Positions 17,652-52,990 of a stretch of DNA of 64,000 nt are shown one piece after another (within the stretch, counting starts at the first letter, position 1; every line of letters starts with the position of its first letter). The DNA comes from Vitrella brassicaformis CCMP3155 (Eukaryota; Protista; Chromerida). The stretch covers positions 109,616-173,615 of the forward strand of contig CDMY01000189.1 in NCBI GenBank assembly GCA_001179505.1, in the 5' to 3' direction. Under the pieces are notes generated by a model. It was not told the origin of the DNA and searched no databases. It worked only from the letters and a program-made list of their open reading frames with translations. Position numbers and translations under genes: made by a program.

Positions 17652-18179
17652 ATGACCGCAGGCAGCTCAGCTGCAGAGAGACGCACATAGGGGTTTATTT
17701 GGTGCGGTCGTGTGTGTGTGTGTGTGTTTCATTCATTCATTAATTCATGCATGCATCGGTTTTTTGTCGTTCTATCGTTCTACACTCGCACGCACGACAA
17801 TCGAGAACGCAATTAAGTTACATAGCAATCGACAGGCGGTGTCTGTCTGATCTCTTTTGCTTTCATTCCTGTGTCTCTAAATCGGTCTGCCTGTCTATCT
17901 GTGTGTCTCTGTCTGTCTGTGTGTCCGCGTTGGGGGCGGGGTGGCGGGGCGGGGTGGTCATTCTCACTCACACCTTAAGACACAGAGAGAGACACCCTCG
18001 GAGAGCGAATGTGTGTGTGAGTGTGTGTGTGTCTGTGTGAGAGAATGTGCATTTGCCATTTTGTGTCAAGTCACCAGCTGATTGTCTTATTATGGTGACG
18101 CTAGCGCTATGCCGGGTGCCTGGGGCGGGTGGCGGGTGGCGGTGGGTGTCACGGCCGGCCGGCCACACACAGGTGACCT

Positions 18180-18479
18180 NNNNNNNNNNNNNNNNNNNNN
18201 NNNNNNNNNNNNNNNNNNNNNNNNNNNNNNNNNNNNNNNNNNNNNNNNNNNNNNNNNNNNNNNNNNNNNNNNNNNNNNNNNNNNNNNNNNNNNNNNNNNN
18301 NNNNNNNNNNNNNNNNNNNNNNNNNNNNNNNNNNNNNNNNNNNNNNNNNNNNNNNNNNNNNNNNNNNNNNNNNNNNNNNNNNNNNNNNNNNNNNNNNNNN
18401 NNNNNNNNNNNNNNNNNNNNNNNNNNNNNNNNNNNNNNNNNNNNNNNNNNNNNNNNNNNNNNNNNNNNNNNNNNNNNNN
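18180..18479. other. Assembly gap (300 N)
   Basis: Run of N. Confidence 1.
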
Positions 18480-18681
18480 GCGATGCTGCATTAATGACCA
18501 CCGGCCTGCGGACAACGTACTGTAAGCAGGTGGGTTAAAAATGGCCTCTCTGTCGAAAGAACGGACAGCTGAGACCATTTCTTTCATTTCTATGCATGTG
18601 CCCTGTCTGTCAGCATACATAGTGTCATATCAGTCACCAAACCACCCCCTATGCACCGCGCCCATGGTCCCACTGTCACAC

Positions 18682-19410
18682 TCACTGCCCGTCATCTTCA
18701 ACAGCAGCAGCAGCGGCGTCAACCACCGTATCGTCGTCGTAGACCAGCCGTGAGTGGGAGGCCCGCACCTCGCCGTGTCGGTTCCAGATGAGGTACTTGC
18801 CCGTGAGCACCTCACTGTGCACCGACACGCCCCCCGCCAGCTTGACGCTCGGGTACACCGCCACAGCCTTCGGGTCGATCTGGATGCCTGAAGGCAATGC
18901 CAATCAGGAAGGAGGCAATGAGAGAGAGAGAGAGAGAGAGAGAAAGCCATGCAATCAGTTCCCACAGGTGGGTGGGGGCTGACTGACTGACTGACCTGAG
19001 AGAGTGACGTCGGGAATCTCCATCAGCACCTCCGCGTAGCAGTTCACCTGCCGGATGACGACAATACCCCCCCCCCCCNNNNNNNNNNNNNNNNNNNNNN
19101 NNNNNNNNNNNNNNNNNNNNNNNNNNNNNNNNNNNNNNNNNNNNNNNNNNNNNNNNNNNNNNNNNNNNNNNNNNNNNNNNNNNNNNNNNNNNNNNNNNNN
19201 NNNNNNNNNNNNNNNNNNNNNNNNNNNNNNNNNNNNNNNNNNNNNNNNNNNNNNNNNNNNNNNNNNNNNNNNNNNNNNNNNNNNNNNNNNNNNNNNNNNN
19301 NNNNNNNNNNNNNNNNNNNNNNNNNNNNNNNNNNNNNNNNNNNNNNNNNNNNNNNNNNNNNNNNNNNNNNNNNNNNNNTGACGACAATACCCCCCCCCCC
19401 CATCCACACA

Positions 19411-19442
<32 letters not shown>

Positions 19443-21262
19443 CCGATAGGCATCCTCCCCGCCCCCGCCCCGCACTCACCCCATGCAGGAAGGGGTCTCG
19501 GGTGAACCAGCCGGAGGACGTGGCGGCAGGACAGCTCGTCGGGGGCGGTGGGGGTGGGGAGGCGGCCGCTGCTGCTGGTGGGGCTGTGGCTGTGGCTGGT
19601 GCTGTGGTGGCAGAGGTTTGACCCAGCTGCTGCTGCTGCTGGGTGGTCGTTGTCATTGTCTGCGCCAGGGTCGAGCCGCGATAGCCCTCACTAGTACTCG
19701 CCCGCACCGCCACACTGCACAAAGCCCGGCACCCAGTCACTGCTCGTGTGACATCCTCCCCTCCCTCCTTCTCACCTCTCGCTGGCCCTACCAGCAGCCA
19801 TCTGTCCATCGCCCCCAACTCCACCCGCCTCGGCCGCCACATAGTCTTTGCCGCCGATCCCACCACCACCACCACCACTGCCCTGCTGCAACTCTCCTCC
19901 ACTACTCGACGACACTGCTGCTGGTGCGGCCGCAGAGGGCGCCGCTGCTACGTCCGTCGGGCTGCTCTGGACAGCAGCAGCAGGGCTGGGAAAGGGTATG
20001 TCAGCTGTAGTAGCTCCAGCTAATGTAGCAGAGGCAGAGGCAGAGGACGGCGGCTGGGGCACGGTTGTTGTGGCCGCAGCAGCAGCAGCAGCCTCTTAAG
20101 AGACGAAGGAAGGGAACCAAGCGTGTGCACGTCTCTGTGTGGCCATCCGTCGCGCACTCACCTCTGGGCATTTCTGCCGGCTTGGAGAGAGATGGTGGCG
20201 CTGCCACGGGCACAGCACCACCACCACCAGCAGCAGCAGGAGGAGGGGCCTGAATCGGCCCGGGGGCCGGCGGCCTCATAGCAGGCAGCGACATCTCCTT
20301 TGGCAACAGCGCCGCGTGTGTCGGCCGCGCCTTAGGCGACGGCGGCGCGTCGAAGGCCAGCTCCCCCAGCAGAGTGGCCTCCACGGGCCCGCCCCGGGAC
20401 ACCAGCCCCCGGCGGCCCGCCAGGTTCCACACGATGCAGTGGTTCTGCTCGATGAGGGAGAAGGTGCCGGCGCTGCACTTGAGGTCGTGGTTGCGGATGG
20501 CCCCTCTGTGGTGGAGGGGGAGGCGGACTTGGCAGCGCGTGAAGGAGGCCGCGATGGAGGGGTGGAAGTGGATCTGTAGGAGGAGCCGCAGCTCGGTGGG
20601 GGAGAGCTCCTTGAGCTGGTAGGCGCCCTTGAGCGGGACGATGCTCGACCTGTTATATCGGTACCTGACGGTCGACAGACAGACAACATCCACTTGTGTG
20701 TGTGTGTGTGGGAGGGGGAGAGGGGGAGGGGGGAGGTGCCTGCTGAGAATGAAAGGTCCAGTGGGCGGTGTGCAGGTGATCTTGAGGATGTTGGCACTGC
20801 CCGACACGGCCTCGCTGCGGGTCGTCAGGGTGGCGCTGTTGTGCACTGCACAATGCCGCACACAGACACACACAGACACACAGTCTGTTTGCTGGGTTCC
20901 CGTCTGTGTGGGGGGTGTGTGTGTGTGCCCCAACGGGCATACCTGTGATCTGTGGAAGGTTGTTAGGCTCCCGGAGAGTGAGGGGCACACTCACCTCGGG
21001 TACGCCAGGGCTGCAGGCACTCAGACACGGACCTGCATGTGTGCCTGTACGTGTCTGTCTGTTACCGACTCACATGTCGGCGCAGCAGTGGAGCGTGCCC
21101 GAGATGAAGCACTCGTCGGGGTACTCTTCCTCTGATGAATCACACACACGCACACACACACATACACACACTCCCTCCTTCCCTCTCCCTGTGCACTGAG
21201 TCACTTCCGTAGAGGGTGCAGTTGACCGTCTCCACAATGTTCAGCGTCAGCTTCGGCTTACC

Positions 21263-48905: not shown

Positions 48906-49498
48906 TGAGCTCAGCTGTGCCGACGAATTCATTGGAAGGATGCAATGGACATGTGTCCACTGATCGAATGGATGGATGGATGGATGGGGGGAGGAAGAAA
49001 GAGGTCCAAAACTGTCTGTCCTGTCACACAACACACAAATCACGAAACATGGCCCATCCATCCATCCATCCTTGACACAATCGTCCGTCCGTCACTGCTC
49101 GCCAGGAAGAAATGGTGCGCTGACTTGGCTAACTGACTGAGTGAGAAAGCAACCAACACCCAACAATACAATGCGGTCAGCAATCAGCAAGCATGTGACG
49201 TGACGTCTACGGACGTCTCCACACCCACGGTGTACACAGTAGCTGGACACACATGCGTACGCACAAATACTCTCTCTACAGCGGCGCCAACCATTCATCC
49301 ATGGTACACACAAATGCGCCGCGCCCATCCCGCCTTGCCCTGCCCCACCAGCGGACAGGCATGCAGCCGAGAAAACCAGTTCTCTCTCACCATCCCTCCC
49401 TCCATCCCTTTACCCTACAGGCGATGATACCAACCGACTACACCGAGCCAACAAAGATCCTTACTGCAACCACACAAGACACCGAAACCGAATGCCAC

Positions 49499-52046
49499 TC
49501 ACTCCTTCTCTCTCTCCTTGTCCTTCTCCCTCTGTGTGCGGGGCGGCGTGCTGAGCTCGGTCGTCCTCTCAAGATAATCCCGCCCCAGAGCCGTTAGCCG
49601 ATATCTGACCCCGCCTGCGCCAGGGGGCACGCCCCCGTCGCCCACAGGCGGCCACGACGAGAGCGGGACGGGGAGGGTGGCACCGGTGGCGCTGGTGTGG
49701 TTCTTCGGCGAAGGCGAGGCCACCCGGCCCGACCCCCGATGCTGTGGGGAGGGGGAGGCAAGGGAGAAGTCGTATGGCGTGGAGGGGGGCGAGCCTGCCG
49801 CTGTGGCGTGGGTGCTCGGCGTGCCCACATGCATCCTCTCGATGAACTTGAGCGACCTGCATAGCCACCAAGTGGGGGCGTGTGTGTGTCCATGTGTGGA
49901 TTCATGGTGTTGGTTGTGGATTTGATTCAGCTGACTTGAGGTCGTTGAGTATCCGTTGGAGGCTCTCGCCGTCGAGTTCGGGGAGCACCCCCGCCTCCAC
50001 CTGCCGCTCGAGCTCCACCGACTCGACGCCGCTGACGTCGCGGCTTGTTGGCTCGGAAGGGCAGTTGCTCTTGATCAACCCCATCACCTTGATGCGCTCC
50101 TTACGGTTCCTTGGCCTGCAGACACACACACACACAGAGACATGCACAGACGTGTGTGTGAGTGACGTACCTGAATCTGAATCTCGGTTCGCGGCACTGT
50201 TGGCAGCGTGCGACGAGCGGCGGGTTGTACTGGAAGCCGCACGCCCGACAGGCCCAGTTTTCCCGCAAGTGCGGCGGGGTGTCTGACGGCGGCATCTCCT
50301 TCTGGAATAGCAGCGGGCACCTCTCGAGTATCTCGTCGCAGTCGGACGTGGTGAACGTCACTATCGAAAACGTCGGCGACTCCTCCTGAACACACAACCC
50401 CTCAACGCTTACACGAGGCTGTCTCTCTCTCTCTCTCTCTGTACGTGTGTGTGTGTCGTCTTGCCTGAAGTTTCTTGAGCCATTCGTCGCACACGCCACT
50501 GAAGTTTTTTGGCCACAGACACACACACATGGATGGATGGATGGATGGATGGATGGGACCAGCCGGACCATGGAGCGATGGGGTTGAGCTCGTCCTTGGG
50601 ATCCACCACGGCAATGGCGCGGAAATCGCTCCGCCGCACTGTCAGCGAGTTGGAGATGCACGCCGATATCGCCGCACGCTCCGCACAGTTGGACCCTGCG
50701 CAGACAGACAGACAGACAGACAGACAGAGACGGCGGCATCCACACATGTCTTTTGGCAATGGTGTGTGTGTCGTCGATTGGTGAGGTATCTGACGGGCAT
50801 ACCTGAGGGCAGGGAGATCTCGGAGTTCATGCCCCTGTAGAATCGCTCCTGGCCGTTCTTGTCGACGACCATGACCACCGCCAGGACGATCTTGCTCGAC
50901 TTGCGGTGCCAGAAAGAGTCCATCTGGCCCTCCAGCGACTTCCACTCATTCACGTAACGACGCGCCTCGTCCACTATCCTGATTGATCGATCCATCAACA
51001 CACACACACACACACACATCAGAAACCTCTTTCTTCGGGGGGTTTTCGCGCTTCACTCACTCAGTGACTAACCGTTTGAGCGGTTCCCTCGGGTCGACCT
51101 CGCTATAGAGCCGCAGACGTGTGTACTCCTGCGTCACCAGCCACCGGTTGCTGCCCGCCAGCAGCCCAGGAGGGGGGGTGGTGGCTGTGCCCCCAGTGGC
51201 CGACCGGCCGCTGTTCTCCCTGTCCAGATTCAGAAACGCCATATCGCTCGCCGGCGGCTGATCGGCCTCCAGCTTGGGCGTGTTGGCATGACTCCCCGGC
51301 CGCGACGACCGAGCCCTCCTCGACGACCGCTTTCGTGACGGTGATTCCAGCTGGTTCCTGCCCGAGTGATAGGGGTAGCTGCTGCTGGCGGTGCTGGGTG
51401 GCGCTGACTCGCAGTAGGGCACCGGCGATGACTGGTTGCTGTCGATTGCTGGTGTGGTGATGGTGACGTACGCTGGCGACGAGGGCCGGTAGGGAGGGGA
51501 GGGGGAGGGGCAGGGGGAGGGGGCGGGAGGGAATTGGACATGGTGAGGGTTGGGGCCATTGACCGAGGCCGCAGCGACAGCAGAGTTGCGCACGGCCTCA
51601 ACCGCATCGGCAAGTTGTGGGCTCAGTCGCGATGGCTCCTCGTAGAAGGTGTGTATCGGAAGACGCCCATTGGACTTGGCCGCAGTAATAGGCGGGACGA
51701 AGTCGCCGCTCGAGTGATTTCTCCTGACGCCCTTATTCGGCCCCCCTCTCTCTCTTCGCCCCATTGGCCGCACCGCCGACCCAGCTGACGGGGGGGACAC
51801 ACCAGACACCCCATTGATGCTGCTCATGACGCGAAGCCAACACCCAGAAGTGGACGAGAGGGCCGCAGCACGAGCAAACTTTTTGCCTCGGTCCGCACAG
51901 ACACCGGAGGCTTCTTGGGTTGTTGTTGTCGATGTGCTGTAGCAGGAGAGCCGTGTTTTGAAGGAGGAGTGGCTCGGCACGAGTGGTTGGAGCCGCTTGC
52001 TGATGACGAATCGGGTGTGGCGTGCAAGGGCCGGTCCGGGTGGCAT
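49499..52046 (-). CDS. Cytidine-deaminase-fold protein with a RanBP2-type zinc finger and a winged-helix-like C-terminus
   Basis: Exons 52046(or 51827)-51061, 50978-50803, 50695-50569, 50498-50465, 50385-50171, 50115-49936 and 49856-49499 splice in frame. They give GMNSEISLPSGSNCAERAAI...PIAPCGVCDEWLKKL, WACRACGFQYNPPLVARCQQC and LQRILNDLKSLKFIER...YRLTALGRDYL. Confidence 0.8.
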
Positions 52047-52304
52047 CCGCGGGCCGTCAGCTGCAGCGGACCACCCAATGGCATCTCATTGGCGGTGTGA
52101 CGAGACGCTCTCAGCTCCAATTGCTTCTGCTTCCATTGACCACCGCTGCCTGCTGAAGGCATAGAGATTCATCGCTTCCTGCGTCTTTGCTTCGATTCTT
52201 TCGAACTTCGAACCAGCAGGAGCGGTTTCATGGAGCACCCTAACACAGACCTTTGCGAGCTCAAGGAAGGGAGAGGGTGGAAAGGGGCATTTTCCGCCAT
52301 CGAA

Positions 52305-52990
52305 ATGAGGCGCACATGCGGTCTTGTTAGCCGACTATCCATTGCTGTGGCTCGCCGCCGGCCTCCCTTCATCGCCAGTGCTCAACGGTGCAAGAGCAGC
52401 ATCGTGCCACGAGGAGACCAAGACCGCAGCAGCCTCGATGACAATGCCGTCGCCCCGCCTGCGTCTGCAGCCGACGATCCCCTCCCAGTGCCATCAACAA
52501 GAGAAAGTGGCGGCGAAGTGTCTGTGAAGCCGACAGCCACAGAGTCTGACTCATCGCTCACGGCAGATGCTGACAGTGGTGGTGGCCTGGTGATCCCTCG
52601 CAGCTGGCTGGACGTGCTGAGCGAGAAGCGGCGCAGGCTGCGGCCGCAGAGGGAGACCAGGGTGGCGATGATGGCCGCCACGATGCCGGTGCAGCGGGCT
52701 GTAGAGGAAGATCTGGATAGCTCTGGCAGGGAGGCCCTGCCGTGGCAGGCCTATGTGGCCCCGCTGATGGTGGGATGGTTCTTTCTCTGTTTCTGTGGCA
52801 TGGGCGTGTTCGCGCTGGCGAGATGGTCAGCCAGACACACGGACAGAATGAATGAAAGACGGAAGGCAAACAGCACCCACGACATATCTCTCTCCCTCTG
52901 TGTGTGTGTGTGTGTGTGCGTGTGTGTAGGTTTGATCCCGGGTATGTGGCTGCCATGAACTTGAAGGCACTGCGCACCCCTACCATATGA
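52305..52990 (+). CDS. Hypothetical single-TM protein, probably mitochondrial
   Basis: R-rich leader MRRTCGLVSRLSIAVARRR and TM YVAPLMVGWFFLCFCGMGVFALA. The likely last exon is FDPGYVAAMNLKALRTPTI*. Confidence 0.55.

What the first reader, a model, noticed from the sequence alone, without database searches (positions are those of the whole stretch)
49499..52046. Zinc deaminase fused to a RanBP2 zinc finger and a winged helix: candidate nucleic-acid-editing deaminase
Seen in sequence: manual splicing of 7 exons gives one frame containing (i) a CDA-fold catalytic core, NCAERAAI ... PCGVCDEW (Cys-type C-A-E plus PCxxC); (ii) WACRACGFQYNPPLVARCQQC, close to the RanBP2/NZF W-x-C-x2-C-x3-N-x6-C-x2-C pattern with one extra residue; and (iii) KERIKVMGLIK...LQRILNDLKSLKFIER...[S/P-rich insert]...YRLTALGRDYL, which looks like a wHTH recognition helix plus Y-x-L-T-x-x-G wing. 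Established: free-nucleoside cytidine deaminases are small single-domain enzymes, whereas deaminases acting on polynucleotides (ADAR with dsRBD/Z-alpha, DYW with PPR arrays) carry nucleic-acid-binding accessory domains. RanBP2 fingers often bind ssRNA and wHTH domains bind DNA or RNA. Inference: this may be an undescribed C-to-U RNA or DNA editing enzyme. If the upstream ATG (52046) is used, the N-terminus (MPPGPALARHTRFVISKRLQ...FKTRLSCYST) is R/S-rich and lacks acidic residues, like a mitochondrial presequence. That matters because the enzymes behind myzozoan organellar editing are unidentified.
Basis: partly seen in the sequence, partly recalled or inferred. Interest (0 to 1): 0.82.

Follow-up and report, generated by a model that had tools for sequence, protein, structure and literature searches.

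The report
Cytidine-deaminase-like enzyme with finger and winged helix
This is a real, expressed gene of the alga Vitrella brassicaformis that joins an intact cytidine-deaminase-type catalytic domain to a small zinc finger and a winged-helix domain; the enzyme family was already described, its substrate is still unknown, and the proposed link to organelle RNA editing is not supported.

Summary
The seven-exon model on the minus strand (52046-49499) is identical, from Met74 onward, to the public Vitrella brassicaformis CCMP3155 protein CEL93791.1 / A0A0G4ECT7. Spliced transcript-like contigs confirm three of the junctions.

- **Deaminase:** it belongs to Pfam PF14421 (LmjF36.5940-like branch of the CDD/CDA clade; E 1.3e-33) and has intact C-A-E and PCxxC motifs.
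- **Finger:** it matches ubiquitin-binding NZF fingers best (TAB2 NZF, E 3.6e-5).
- **C-terminus:** it is predicted to fold as a winged helix (Z up to 11.6; the 50 listed matches are dominated by PadR/MarR-type and other named winged-helix proteins), with disordered inserts.

Deaminase, finger and winged helix are conserved together in chromerids and gregarines.

The clade was described in 2011, including a Perkinsus version with a C-terminal ubiquitin-binding zinc ribbon. Its one studied member, T. brucei CDA-like, shifts free pyrimidine nucleotide pools and is cytosolic. The nearest structures are free-nucleoside cytidine deaminases. Organellar editing is unlikely: full-architecture orthologues occur in eugregarines that appear to lack organelle genomes, and Vitrella shows no widespread plastid editing.

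The winged-helix module appears undescribed in the literature I could search. The scan flagged the same architecture on another piece of this genome, probably a paralogue.

The parts
49499..52046 (-). Whole coding region in its longest reading (687 codons, 7 exons, stop included). The public annotation CEL93791.1 starts at ATG 51827 (Met74).
   Evidence: Transcript-like contigs cover 52085 down to 49000.
51828..52046 (-). Optional N-terminal extension of 73 codons (MPPGPALARH...). It is R/S/T-rich and its first acidic residue is at position 45. Whether it is translated is uncertain.
   Evidence: GC3 is 0.63, against 0.75-0.83 in the rest of the CDS and about 0.55 upstream. Upstream ATGs at 52089 and 52084 lie in other frames. 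The region is not shared with the paralogues.
51073..51827 (-). Rest of exon 1. It is mostly a disordered S/P-rich region with a basic SPSRKRSSRRARSSR stretch (51344-51300). The deaminase domain begins at NRWLVTQEY (51149).
   Evidence: No Pfam hit in exon 1. Paralogue similarity starts only around 51220. Coordinates.
50803..50978 (-). Exon 2: the first strands of the deaminase core, including the invariant N-S-E triplet (50827-50819).
   Evidence: PF14421 E 1.7e-9 on this exon alone. The exon 1/2 junction is seen in X1 and X2 contigs. N and E are invariant in the family.
50569..50695 (-). Exon 3: the catalytic helix NCAERAAI (CAE at 50687-50679) and the first part of PCGVC.
   Evidence: C, A, E and R are invariant across 12 family members.
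50465..50498 (-). Exon 4: a 34-nt micro-exon that completes PCGVCDEWLKKLQ. It is followed by a GC-AG intron.
   Evidence: It agrees with the public protein and with collinear orthologues. The junction was not shown directly by contigs.
50296..50385 (-). First part of exon 5: the end of the deaminase domain, including RCPLLF (50322-50305). This aligns with the LLPxxF tail of nucleoside cytidine deaminases.
   Evidence: phmmer alignment to metagenomic Cdd 7zob. Coordinates.
50182..50256 (-). NZF/RanBP2-type C4 zinc finger WACRACGFQYNPPLVARCQQCREPR. It has one extra residue between the first knuckle and the Asn.
   Evidence: TAB2/TAB3 NZF at E 3.6e-5 and 2.4e-4, then HOIP and NPL4 NZFs. Foldseek gives TAB3-NZF with TM 0.78 and rmsd 1.7 A. 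The orthologous fingers reach PF00641 (27.2 and 23.3 bits), but this one does not.
49553..50105 (-). Winged-helix module spanning exons 5/6 to 7. H1 is RKERIKVMGLIKSN, H2 is SVELERQVEAGV, H3 plus the first wing strand is GESLQRILNDLKSLKFIER, and the second wing strand plus C-terminal helix is RYRLTALGRDYLERTTEL.
   Evidence: AlphaFold model of P0018:400-614. VIA-align Z 9.7-11.6 to PadR/MarR/Rio2-N/AphA and other named winged-helix proteins. Foldseek's top hits are mostly PadR/MarR/Fur. An independent ESM Atlas model of the G. niphandrodes orthologue matches wHTH clusters.
49607..49834 (-). A 76-residue S/P-rich disordered insert in the tip of the wing.
   Evidence: pLDDT is below 50. The insert is absent in G. 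niphandrodes and much longer in Chromera.

Best explanation
The locus encodes an expressed, catalytically intact zinc-dependent cytosine deaminase of the LmjF36.5940-like branch (PF14421) of the CDD/CDA clade.

Chemistry (inferred from the superfamily). One Cys of C-A-E and the two Cys of PCGVC hold a zinc ion. The zinc activates water, the Glu of C-A-E shuttles the proton, and a cytosine ring is converted to uracil.

Substrate (inferred, not shown). I think the substrate is most likely a cytidine or deoxycytidine nucleoside or nucleotide of the free pool, for example CMP or dCMP-type compounds, as proposed for the T. brucei clade member.

Accessory domains. The conserved NZF-type finger, the basic linker and the winged helix most likely act as localisation, partner-binding or regulatory modules rather than as guides to editing sites. 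They could tether the enzyme to nucleic-acid or ubiquitin-containing assemblies, or dimerise it.

What is shown: gene structure, expression as spliced contigs, family membership, intact catalytic motifs, and conservation and predicted folds of the finger and the winged helix. What is inferred: the substrate and the role of the accessory domains.
For: Family and catalytic motifs:
- PF14421 at 1.3e-33, and PF00383 at its cut-off.
- The catalytic residues are invariant in 12 family members.

Resemblance to free-nucleoside deaminases:
- The nearest solved structures of the orthologue's model are all free-nucleoside tetrameric cytidine deaminases or blasticidin S deaminase. No APOBEC, TadA or ADAR appears in the top 50.
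- The sequence alignments to B. subtilis, human and metagenomic CDAs keep the N-x-E dyad. The alignment to the metagenomic Cdd (7zob) also keeps the C-terminal Pxx(F) tail.
- From my own knowledge of CDA structures, those residues bind the ribose 3'-OH and stack on the pyrimidine ring.

Functional data and fusions elsewhere in the clade:
- Overexpression of T. brucei CDA-like lowers CTP and dCTP and raises UTP and dTTP. Knock-down accumulates CMP. The protein is cytosolic (PMC12064671).
- Other clade members are fused to a cytidylyltransferase-like nucleotide-binding domain.

Accessory modules:
- They are conserved from chromerids to gregarines.
- They tolerate very large disordered inserts.
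Against: - No substrate has been identified biochemically for any member of the clade (PMC12064671).
- Conserved fusion to a zinc finger plus a winged helix here, and to CCCH fingers in kinetoplastids, is what one expects of a macromolecule-directed deaminase.
- The T. brucei protein relocates to stress granules.
- The residues that neighbouring subunits contribute to the active site in tetrameric CDAs are not conserved: the R-Q after PCxxC is D-E-W here. The 5' side of the pocket may therefore differ (inference).
- The T. brucei protein shares only the deaminase domain with this one.
Confidence: 0.42

Rival explanations
1. It is a nuclear or cytosolic polynucleotide deaminase. It would edit C to U in RNA, or mutate or demodify DNA cytosines. 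The winged helix and finger would bind the nucleic acid and position the catalytic domain, by analogy with ADAR1 (Z-alpha winged helix plus deaminase).
For: - The deaminase-finger-winged-helix architecture is conserved across chromerids and gregarines.
- The winged helix most resembles DNA-binding PadR/MarR domains, and also the RNA-contacting Rio2 N-terminal domain.
- A conserved basic-aromatic linker, PRF(R/K)F(R/K), follows the finger.
- Kinetoplastid relatives carry CCCH fingers, and the clade was predicted to edit mRNA or mutate DNA (PMC3239186).
- The T. brucei member enters stress granules, and its overexpression causes DNA damage.
- Yeast CDD1, a top structural match, is titled an orphan C-to-U editase.
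Against: - The catalytic domain keeps the nucleoside-CDA sugar-binding and ring-stacking residues, and it looks like closed-pocket CDAs.
- The finger matches ubiquitin-binding NZFs better than RNA-binding RanBP2 fingers (RBM10 only at E 0.27).
- No winged-helix Pfam family reaches its threshold.
- The wing tip and the H1-H2 loop carry huge variable inserts.
- No C-to-U differences were seen on this gene's own transcripts, which is a very narrow test.
Confidence: 0.3
2. It is an organellar (mitochondrial or plastid) RNA-editing enzyme, imported through the R/S-rich N-terminus that the upstream ATG at 52046 would add.
For: - The 73-residue extension has no acidic residue before position 45 and is rich in R, S and T.
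- A transcript-like contig reaches 52085, so the ATG at 52046 can be in the mRNA.
Against: - Full-architecture orthologues exist in Gregarina and Blabericola. [quoted passage not shown] That paper also cites Toso & Omoto 2007 for a probable lack of a plastid in G. niphandrodes.
- The G. niphandrodes protein has only 12 residues before the domain.
- Widespread plastid editing is not observed in Vitrella (PMC5888634).
- The extension has a weak coding signature, is preceded by out-of-frame ATGs at 52089 and 52084, is not in the public model and is absent from both paralogues.
- There is no signal peptide of the kind a chromerid plastid protein would need (sequence inspection).
- The T. brucei relative is cytosolic.
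- No dinoflagellate protein was named among the family hits. This is not an exhaustive test.
Confidence: 0.03
3. It is an enzyme-regulator hybrid. The winged helix would bind DNA, or dimerise the protein, and would couple gene regulation or protein stability to the cytidine-nucleotide state sensed by the deaminase domain, in the manner of BirA or NadR. The NZF finger would recruit it to ubiquitin chains.
For: - The PadR/MarR-like winged helix has the C-terminal helix that those families use for dimerisation.
- The finger is closest to the K63-chain-binding TAB2/TAB3 NZFs.
- The Perkinsus finger was read as ubiquitin-binding by Iyer et al..
Against: - From my recollection of the NZF ubiquitin-binding signature (Thr-Phe after the first knuckle), it is only half kept here. 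This finger has Gly-Phe plus one extra residue, and gregarine fingers have a C-x-C first knuckle.
- Enzyme-repressor fusions are a bacterial theme, and I know of no eukaryotic precedent.
- Nothing was tested directly.
Confidence: 0.12

Closest known systems
LmjF36.5940-like clade of CDD/CDA deaminases (Pfam PF14421; Iyer et al. 2011, PMC3239186), Perkinsus sub-type
   Same: The deaminase domain is the same family (117 bits). It has the C-A-E and PCxxC motifs. A C-terminal NZF-type zinc ribbon follows the deaminase, as reported for Perkinsus.
   Different: The winged-helix module after the finger is not mentioned in that paper: 'winged' and 'wHTH' each occur 0 times in the text. I did not retrieve the Perkinsus protein, so I could not check whether it also has the module.
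T. brucei CDA-like protein Tb927.10.8850 (PMC12064671)
   Same: Same deaminase clade. It is the only member with functional data: it shifts pyrimidine nucleotide pools, is cytosolic and enters stress granules.
   Different: The kinetoplastid proteins carry N-terminal CCCH fingers and a C2C2 insert within the deaminase domain. This protein has neither, and instead carries the NZF finger and winged helix at its C-terminus.
Homotetrameric cytidine deaminases (B. subtilis CDA 1jtk, human 1mq0, mouse 2fr5, yeast CDD1 1r5t)
   Same: These are the best structural and sequence matches for the catalytic core. They share the N-x-E, C-A-E-R, PCGxC and Pxx(F) positions.
   Different: - Those enzymes are single-domain proteins of about 130-140 residues.
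- This family adds N- and C-terminal elements to the core (strand 13-24 and strand 160-174 in the G. niphandrodes model).
- It replaces the R-Q after PCxxC with D-E-W.
- It carries two accessory domains and long disordered regions.
NZF (Npl4-type) zinc fingers of TAB2/TAB3, HOIP and NPL4
   Same: C4 spacing, the leading Trp, the Phe after the first knuckle, the Asn and the C-terminal P-R. The predicted fold superposes on the TAB3 NZF at 1.7 A.
   Different: There is one extra residue before the Asn, and Gly replaces the Thr of the Thr-Phe pair. PF00641 is not reached by this copy. Ubiquitin binding is untested.
PadR/MarR-type winged helix-turn-helix domains
   Same: The topology is H1-(b1)-H2-H3-b2-b3 followed by a C-terminal helix. 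Z is 10-11.6 with rmsd 1.6-3.5 A over 75-98 residues.
   Different: - Sequence identity is only 13-26%.
- No wHTH Pfam family scores above its cut-off. In orthologues, Rio2_N reaches E 6.8e-4 and WH_PARP12 reaches E 0.023.
- There are long disordered inserts between H1 and H2 and in the wing tip.
- The context is eukaryotic and fused to an enzyme.

Membership tests
CDD/CDA-like zinc deaminase superfamily | (C/H)-A-E catalytic motif plus a P-C-x-x-C zinc-binding motif | tested here: met
   NCAER and PCGVC are present and invariant in 12 homologues. PF00383 scores 25.0 bits, which equals its cut-off of 25.
CDD/CDA-like zinc deaminase superfamily | Deaminase fold resembling solved cytidine deaminases | tested here: met
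   The AlphaFold model of orthologue P0008 has pLDDT mostly 86-97 over most of the core. It matches 43 CDA or BSD chains at E <= 1e-3. This was done on the orthologue, not on the window protein itself.
LmjF36.5940-like clade (PF14421) | Profile match above Pfam's gathering score | tested here: met
   117.1 bits against 27.1, E 1.3e-33. Exon 2 alone scores 38.2 bits.
LmjF36.5940-like clade, kinetoplastid sub-type | N-terminal CCCH fingers and a C2C2 insert between strands 1 and 2 | tested here: not met
   No CCCH family is hit. No Cys-rich insert is seen in the alignment.
LmjF36.5940-like clade, chlorophyte/stramenopile sub-type | Fusion to a Rossmann-fold (cytidylyltransferase-like) domain | tested here: not met
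   PF01467 is found in P0020 and P0021 but not in P0018.
RanBP2/NZF zinc finger | W-x-C-x2-C-x3-N-x6-C-x2-C spacing and a profile match | tested here: inconclusive
   The spacing here is x4 before the Asn. PF00641 gives no hit at E <= 0.1 in P0018, yet the orthologous fingers score 27.2 bits (P0006) and 23.3 bits (P0013). phmmer against PDB NZFs gives E 3.6e-5, and the fold match to the TAB3 NZF has TM 0.78. UniProt names the protein a RanBP2-type domain-containing protein.
Ubiquitin-binding NZF subclass | Thr-Phe pair after the first zinc knuckle (the signature as I recall it from the NZF literature) | tested here: not met
   Gly-Phe in this protein and most orthologues. One metagenomic orthologue has Thr-Phe. 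Binding itself cannot be tested here.
ssRNA-binding RanBP2 subclass (ZRANB2/RBM10-like) | N-(F/W)-x-x-R after the first knuckle (the signature as I recall it) | tested here: not met
   The sequence after the Asn is N-P-P-L-V-A-R. The RBM10 finger matches only at E 0.27, and RanBP2 at E 0.75.
Winged helix-turn-helix fold | Three-helix bundle with a beta-hairpin wing (H1-b1-H2-H3-b2-b3) | tested here: met
   Predicted for the window protein and for the G. niphandrodes orthologue. The 50 listed VIA matches are dominated by PadR/MarR-type and other named winged-helix proteins, with Z 9.7-11.6. The independent Atlas model matches wHTH clusters. This is prediction only.
Any named wHTH sequence family (PadR, MarR, Rio2_N, etc.) | Profile match above the gathering score | tested here: not met
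   There is nothing in P0018. In orthologues there are only sub-threshold hits: Rio2_N at 20.3 bits against 27, and WH_PARP12 at 15 bits against 27.
Mitochondrial presequence-bearing proteins | A cleavable amphipathic basic N-terminal presequence on the translated protein | not testable with these tools
   No targeting predictor is available. The composition fits. However, the start codon is uncertain, the coding signature is weak and the region is not conserved.

The most novel reading that the evidence does not exclude
The alveolate deaminase-NZF-winged-helix proteins (chromerids, gregarines, probably Perkinsus) would be a previously uncharacterised family of eukaryotic polynucleotide cytosine deaminases. 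The winged helix and finger would deliver a CDA-type catalytic domain to RNA or DNA. That would make them an independent invention of the ADAR1-like 'winged helix plus deaminase' solution.
Probability: 0.27. Interest if true: 0.8.

Novelty: new variant of a known kind. Interest (0 to 1): 0.42.

Why it matters
- **What it could reveal.** The LmjF36.5940-like deaminases are spread widely across microbial eukaryotes, and none has a known substrate. The alveolate version pairs an apparently active CDA core with two conserved macromolecule-binding modules. That makes it a good test case for whether this clade works on free nucleotides, on nucleic acids, or on both.
- **If it acts on polynucleotides.** It would be a new family of eukaryotic editing or mutator enzymes, and a compact candidate for base-editing tools.
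- **If it acts on nucleotide pools.** It would fill a gap in pyrimidine salvage in chromerids and gregarines, and it would show how a metabolic deaminase is localised.
- **What it does not do.** It does not currently bear on dinoflagellate organellar editing.

Tried and rejected
- **Exon-by-exon Pfam scan.** It found the deaminase but nothing for the finger or the winged helix, because the winged helix is split by an intron. I therefore fetched the full-length public protein instead.
- **Passing the spliced protein to tools.** This was not possible by reference, and I did not type it in. I used the one exhaustive protein search, with exon 5 as query, to recover full-length relatives, and then a word search to recover the gene's own product, P0018.
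- **Word search with the whole-family alignment.** Low-complexity words swamped it, and only 5 of 8000 candidates were real.
- **Word search with P0008.** Because of the length window and the word filter, this is not evidence of absence.
- **Z-alpha-like reading of the winged helix.** I considered and dropped it. No Z-alpha domain appears among the top structural matches. From memory, the Asn/Tyr/Trp contact pattern is also absent.
- **Pseudoenzyme reading.** Rejected, because all catalytic residues are invariant.
- **Flanking-gene paralogy.** I checked whether the TLD-domain neighbours of both paralogue loci point to a segmental duplication. Similarity between the three loci is confined to the stretch from the deaminase to the winged helix.
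Full report
**1. What is in the sequence**

On the minus strand, between 52046 and 49499, seven exons splice into a single open frame of 687 codons. The exons are 52046-51073, 50978-50803, 50695-50569, 50498-50465, 50385-50171, 50115-49936 and 49856-49499.

Five of the six introns have GT-AG ends. Intron 4, which follows a 34-nt micro-exon, has a GC-AG end.

From Met74 on, the translation is identical to a public protein, P0018. That protein is CEL93791.1 / UniProt A0A0G4ECT7, named 'RanBP2-type domain-containing protein', from Vitrella brassicaformis CCMP3155. The window is therefore Vitrella DNA.

**2. Expression and splicing**

Contigs of runs X1 and X2 are only guessed to be RNA, but they are clearly intron-less. 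They join exon 1 to exon 2 (51072|50977) and exon 5 to exon 6. A loose end reading ...CAACGACCTCAA joins exon 6 to exon 7.

The contigs cover the gene from 52085 to 49000. The DNA runs X3 and X5 keep the introns.

The junctions around exon 4 were not shown directly, because the exon is too short and lies beside repeats. They are supported by the public model and by orthologues that read PCGVCDEW(L/I)KK(L/I)(Q/E)E without interruption.

No base differences from the genome were listed on this gene.

**3. The catalytic domain**

- The full protein matches PF14421 (LmjF365940 subfamily CDD/CDA-like deaminase) at E 1.3e-33, with 117 bits against a cut-off of 27.1. It matches PF00383 exactly at that family's cut-off.
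- NCAER (50690-50676) and PCGVC (50573-50489) are invariant in all twelve family members aligned.
- phmmer against solved structures finds only cytidine deaminases.
- The AlphaFold model of the compact G. niphandrodes orthologue has pLDDT mostly 86-97 over most of the core. It matches homotetrameric cytidine deaminases and blasticidin S deaminase throughout the top 50.
- The sequence alignments keep the N-x-E dyad, and the alignment to the metagenomic Cdd also keeps the C-terminal Pxx(F) tail. From my knowledge of CDA structures, these residues hold the ribose 3'-OH and stack on the pyrimidine ring.
- The R-Q that follows PCxxC in tetrameric CDAs is D-E-W here.

**4. The zinc finger**

WACRACGFQYNPPLVARCQQCREPR (50256-50182) has the C4 pattern of RanBP2/NZF fingers, with one extra residue before the Asn.

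It does not reach PF00641. The orthologous fingers of P0006 (27.2 bits) and P0013 (23.3 bits) do.

Against solved structures the order of matches is as follows:

| Finger | E-value |
|---|---|
| TAB2 NZF | 3.6e-5 |
| TAB3 NZF | 2.4e-4 |
| HOIP NZF | 0.057 |
| NPL4 NZF | 0.076 |
| RBM10 (RNA-binding) | 0.27 |
| RanBP2 | 0.75 |

The predicted fold superposes on the TAB3 NZF at 1.7 A.

The finger is therefore real and closest to the ubiquitin-binding NZF class, as Iyer et al. read the Perkinsus one. However, it has Gly-Phe rather than Thr-Phe, and gregarine copies have a C-x-C first knuckle. What it binds remains open.

**5. The winged helix**

I modelled P0018:400-614 with nine homologues. The model gives these elements, in order, in CEL93791.1 numbering:

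- H1, residues 437-453.
- A short strand.
- H2, residues 468-476.
- H3, residues 485-497.
- Strand, residues 501-505.
- A disordered insert of about 75 residues.
- Strand, residues 579-583.
- A C-terminal helix, residues 585-598.

The evidence that this is a winged helix:

- An exhaustive structural comparison gives Z 9.7-11.6. The 50 listed matches are dominated by PadR/MarR-type regulators and other named winged-helix proteins, such as VanR, AphA, the Rio2 N-terminal domain, TubR and WRN RQC.
- Foldseek E-values are weak (at least 0.18), but the top hits are mostly PadR/MarR/Fur.
- The G. niphandrodes orthologue shows the same topology at pLDDT 85-95.
- The ESM Atlas's own model of that orthologue matches wHTH clusters.
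- Sub-threshold Pfam hits in orthologues are also to winged-helix families: Rio2_N at 6.8e-4 and WH_PARP12 at 0.023.

It is not a member of any named wHTH sequence family.

**6. Relatives**

The exhaustive search with exon 5 found nine proteins that cover both the end of the deaminase and the finger:

- Three Vitrella paralogues.
- Two Chromera proteins.
- Gregarina niphandrodes, Gregarina sp. Poly1, Blabericola migrator and Lankesteria.
- Unnamed metagenomic or Logan proteins.

Most of those whose sequence reaches that far also carry SLKFIE and (Y/F)xLTxLG(R)(D/E)(F/Y).

Within Vitrella:

- Paralogue 1 (L001) encodes the complete module, although its public model is truncated.
- Paralogue 2 (L002) has lost the first zinc knuckle.
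- Similarity among the three loci runs only from the start of the deaminase domain to the end of the winged helix. The 290-residue N-terminal region of the window gene is unique to it.

Other PF14421 members carry a cytidylyltransferase-like domain instead.

**7. What is already known**

Iyer et al. 2011 defined the LmjF36.5940-like clade (PMC3239186). [quoted passage not shown] They suggested mRNA editing or DNA mutagenesis. They do not mention a winged helix.

A 2025 study of the T. brucei member (PMC12064671) reports:

- Overexpression lowers CTP and dCTP and raises UTP and dTTP.
- Knock-down accumulates CMP.
- The protein is cytosolic and enters stress granules.
- No substrate could be identified with recombinant protein.

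A 2023 structure-clustering preprint notes that the family splits into two structural clades. A search for papers combining cytidine deaminase, RanBP2-type and winged helix found none.

**8. Function**

I commit to an active cytosine deaminase whose most likely substrates are free cytidine or deoxycytidine nucleosides or nucleotides. On this reading the finger, the basic linker and the winged helix serve localisation, partner binding or regulation (confidence about 0.42).

The reasons are the CDA-like pocket residues, the exclusively nucleoside-CDA structural neighbours, the T. brucei nucleotide-pool phenotypes and the cytidylyltransferase fusions elsewhere in the clade.

The main rival is a polynucleotide deaminase guided by the winged helix and finger (about 0.3). 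It is favoured by the deep conservation of two macromolecule-binding modules and by the CCCH fusions in kinetoplastids.

These two readings can only be separated at the bench.

**9. Organellar editing**

[quoted passage not shown] That paper cites work suggesting G. niphandrodes lacks a plastid as well.
- The G. niphandrodes protein has only 12 residues before the domain.
- Widespread plastid editing is not observed in Vitrella (PMC5888634).
- The presequence-like 73 codons have GC3 of 0.63, against 0.75-0.83 downstream.
- They are preceded in the transcript by out-of-frame ATGs at 52089 and 52084.
- They are not in the public model and are not shared with the paralogues.

No targeting predictor was available, so import is not excluded. 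I put it at about 3%.

**10. Verdict**

The gene is a member of a described but biochemically unsolved deaminase clade. Its alveolate architecture adds a winged helix that I could not find described. I rate it a new variant of a known kind, with moderate interest.

The scan's notes list the same architecture on another piece of this genome (s1-199348). That is probably one of the paralogues I examined.

Noticed in passing
window 50465-50498 and intron to 50386: Exon 4 is a 34-nt micro-exon followed by a GC-AG intron (donor GCAAGA). It is the only non-GT donor in the gene.
   Followed up: partly
window 50400-50565, 50700-50745, 50990-51020, 50120-50170: The introns are largely microsatellites: (CA/GT)n, (GA)n, (CTGT)n and (CCAT)n. 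The read tool skipped these as repeats.
   Followed up: no
window 49053-49071 and 49389-49409: Many DNA contigs of runs X3 and X5 branch here: up to 14 loose ends at one position, with differing continuations. X1 and X2 contigs carry a joint between 49071 and 49390 (a roughly 318-base skip with 6 letters, CTCCAT, between the two sides). This suggests a dispersed (GGAT/CCAT)-type repeat and possibly an intron in the 3' UTR.
   Followed up: no
window 52084-52172: There are several upstream ATGs: 52172, 52162, 52136, 52089 and 52084. The one at 52084 opens an 86-codon frame that overlaps the start of the CDS. A transcript contig ends at 52085, so the true 5' end is unknown.
   Followed up: partly
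L001:5285-5482: The public model of Vitrella paralogue CEM27920.1 (P0001) stops early. The genome goes on to encode SLKFIEK...GGVRYRLTALGRDYLERTTELS, so this paralogue has the complete winged helix.
   Followed up: yes
L002:4740-6205: Paralogue CEL99527.1 (P0007) lacks the stretch holding the first zinc knuckle (W-x-C-x-x-C), and its H3 exon was not found. It still encodes a diverged GYRLTASGMDYLERT beyond the annotated gene end. It may be a decaying copy or a mis-annotated one.
   Followed up: partly
L001:1-1686 and L002:6570-9789: Both paralogue loci have a neighbouring gene with weak or faint TLD-domain (PF07534) hits. No matching neighbour similarity to the window was seen.
   Followed up: partly
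window 18001-20000: GC content drops to 0.43 in a window that otherwise runs at 0.52-0.65.
   Followed up: no
window 52230-52958 (+): There is a divergently oriented 242-codon ORF immediately upstream. Transcript-like contigs (X1 record 6, X2 record 13) cover part of it, from 52269 (X1) or 52353 (X2) to 52600, the end of the stretch laid. It is probably a separate neighbouring gene.
   Followed up: no
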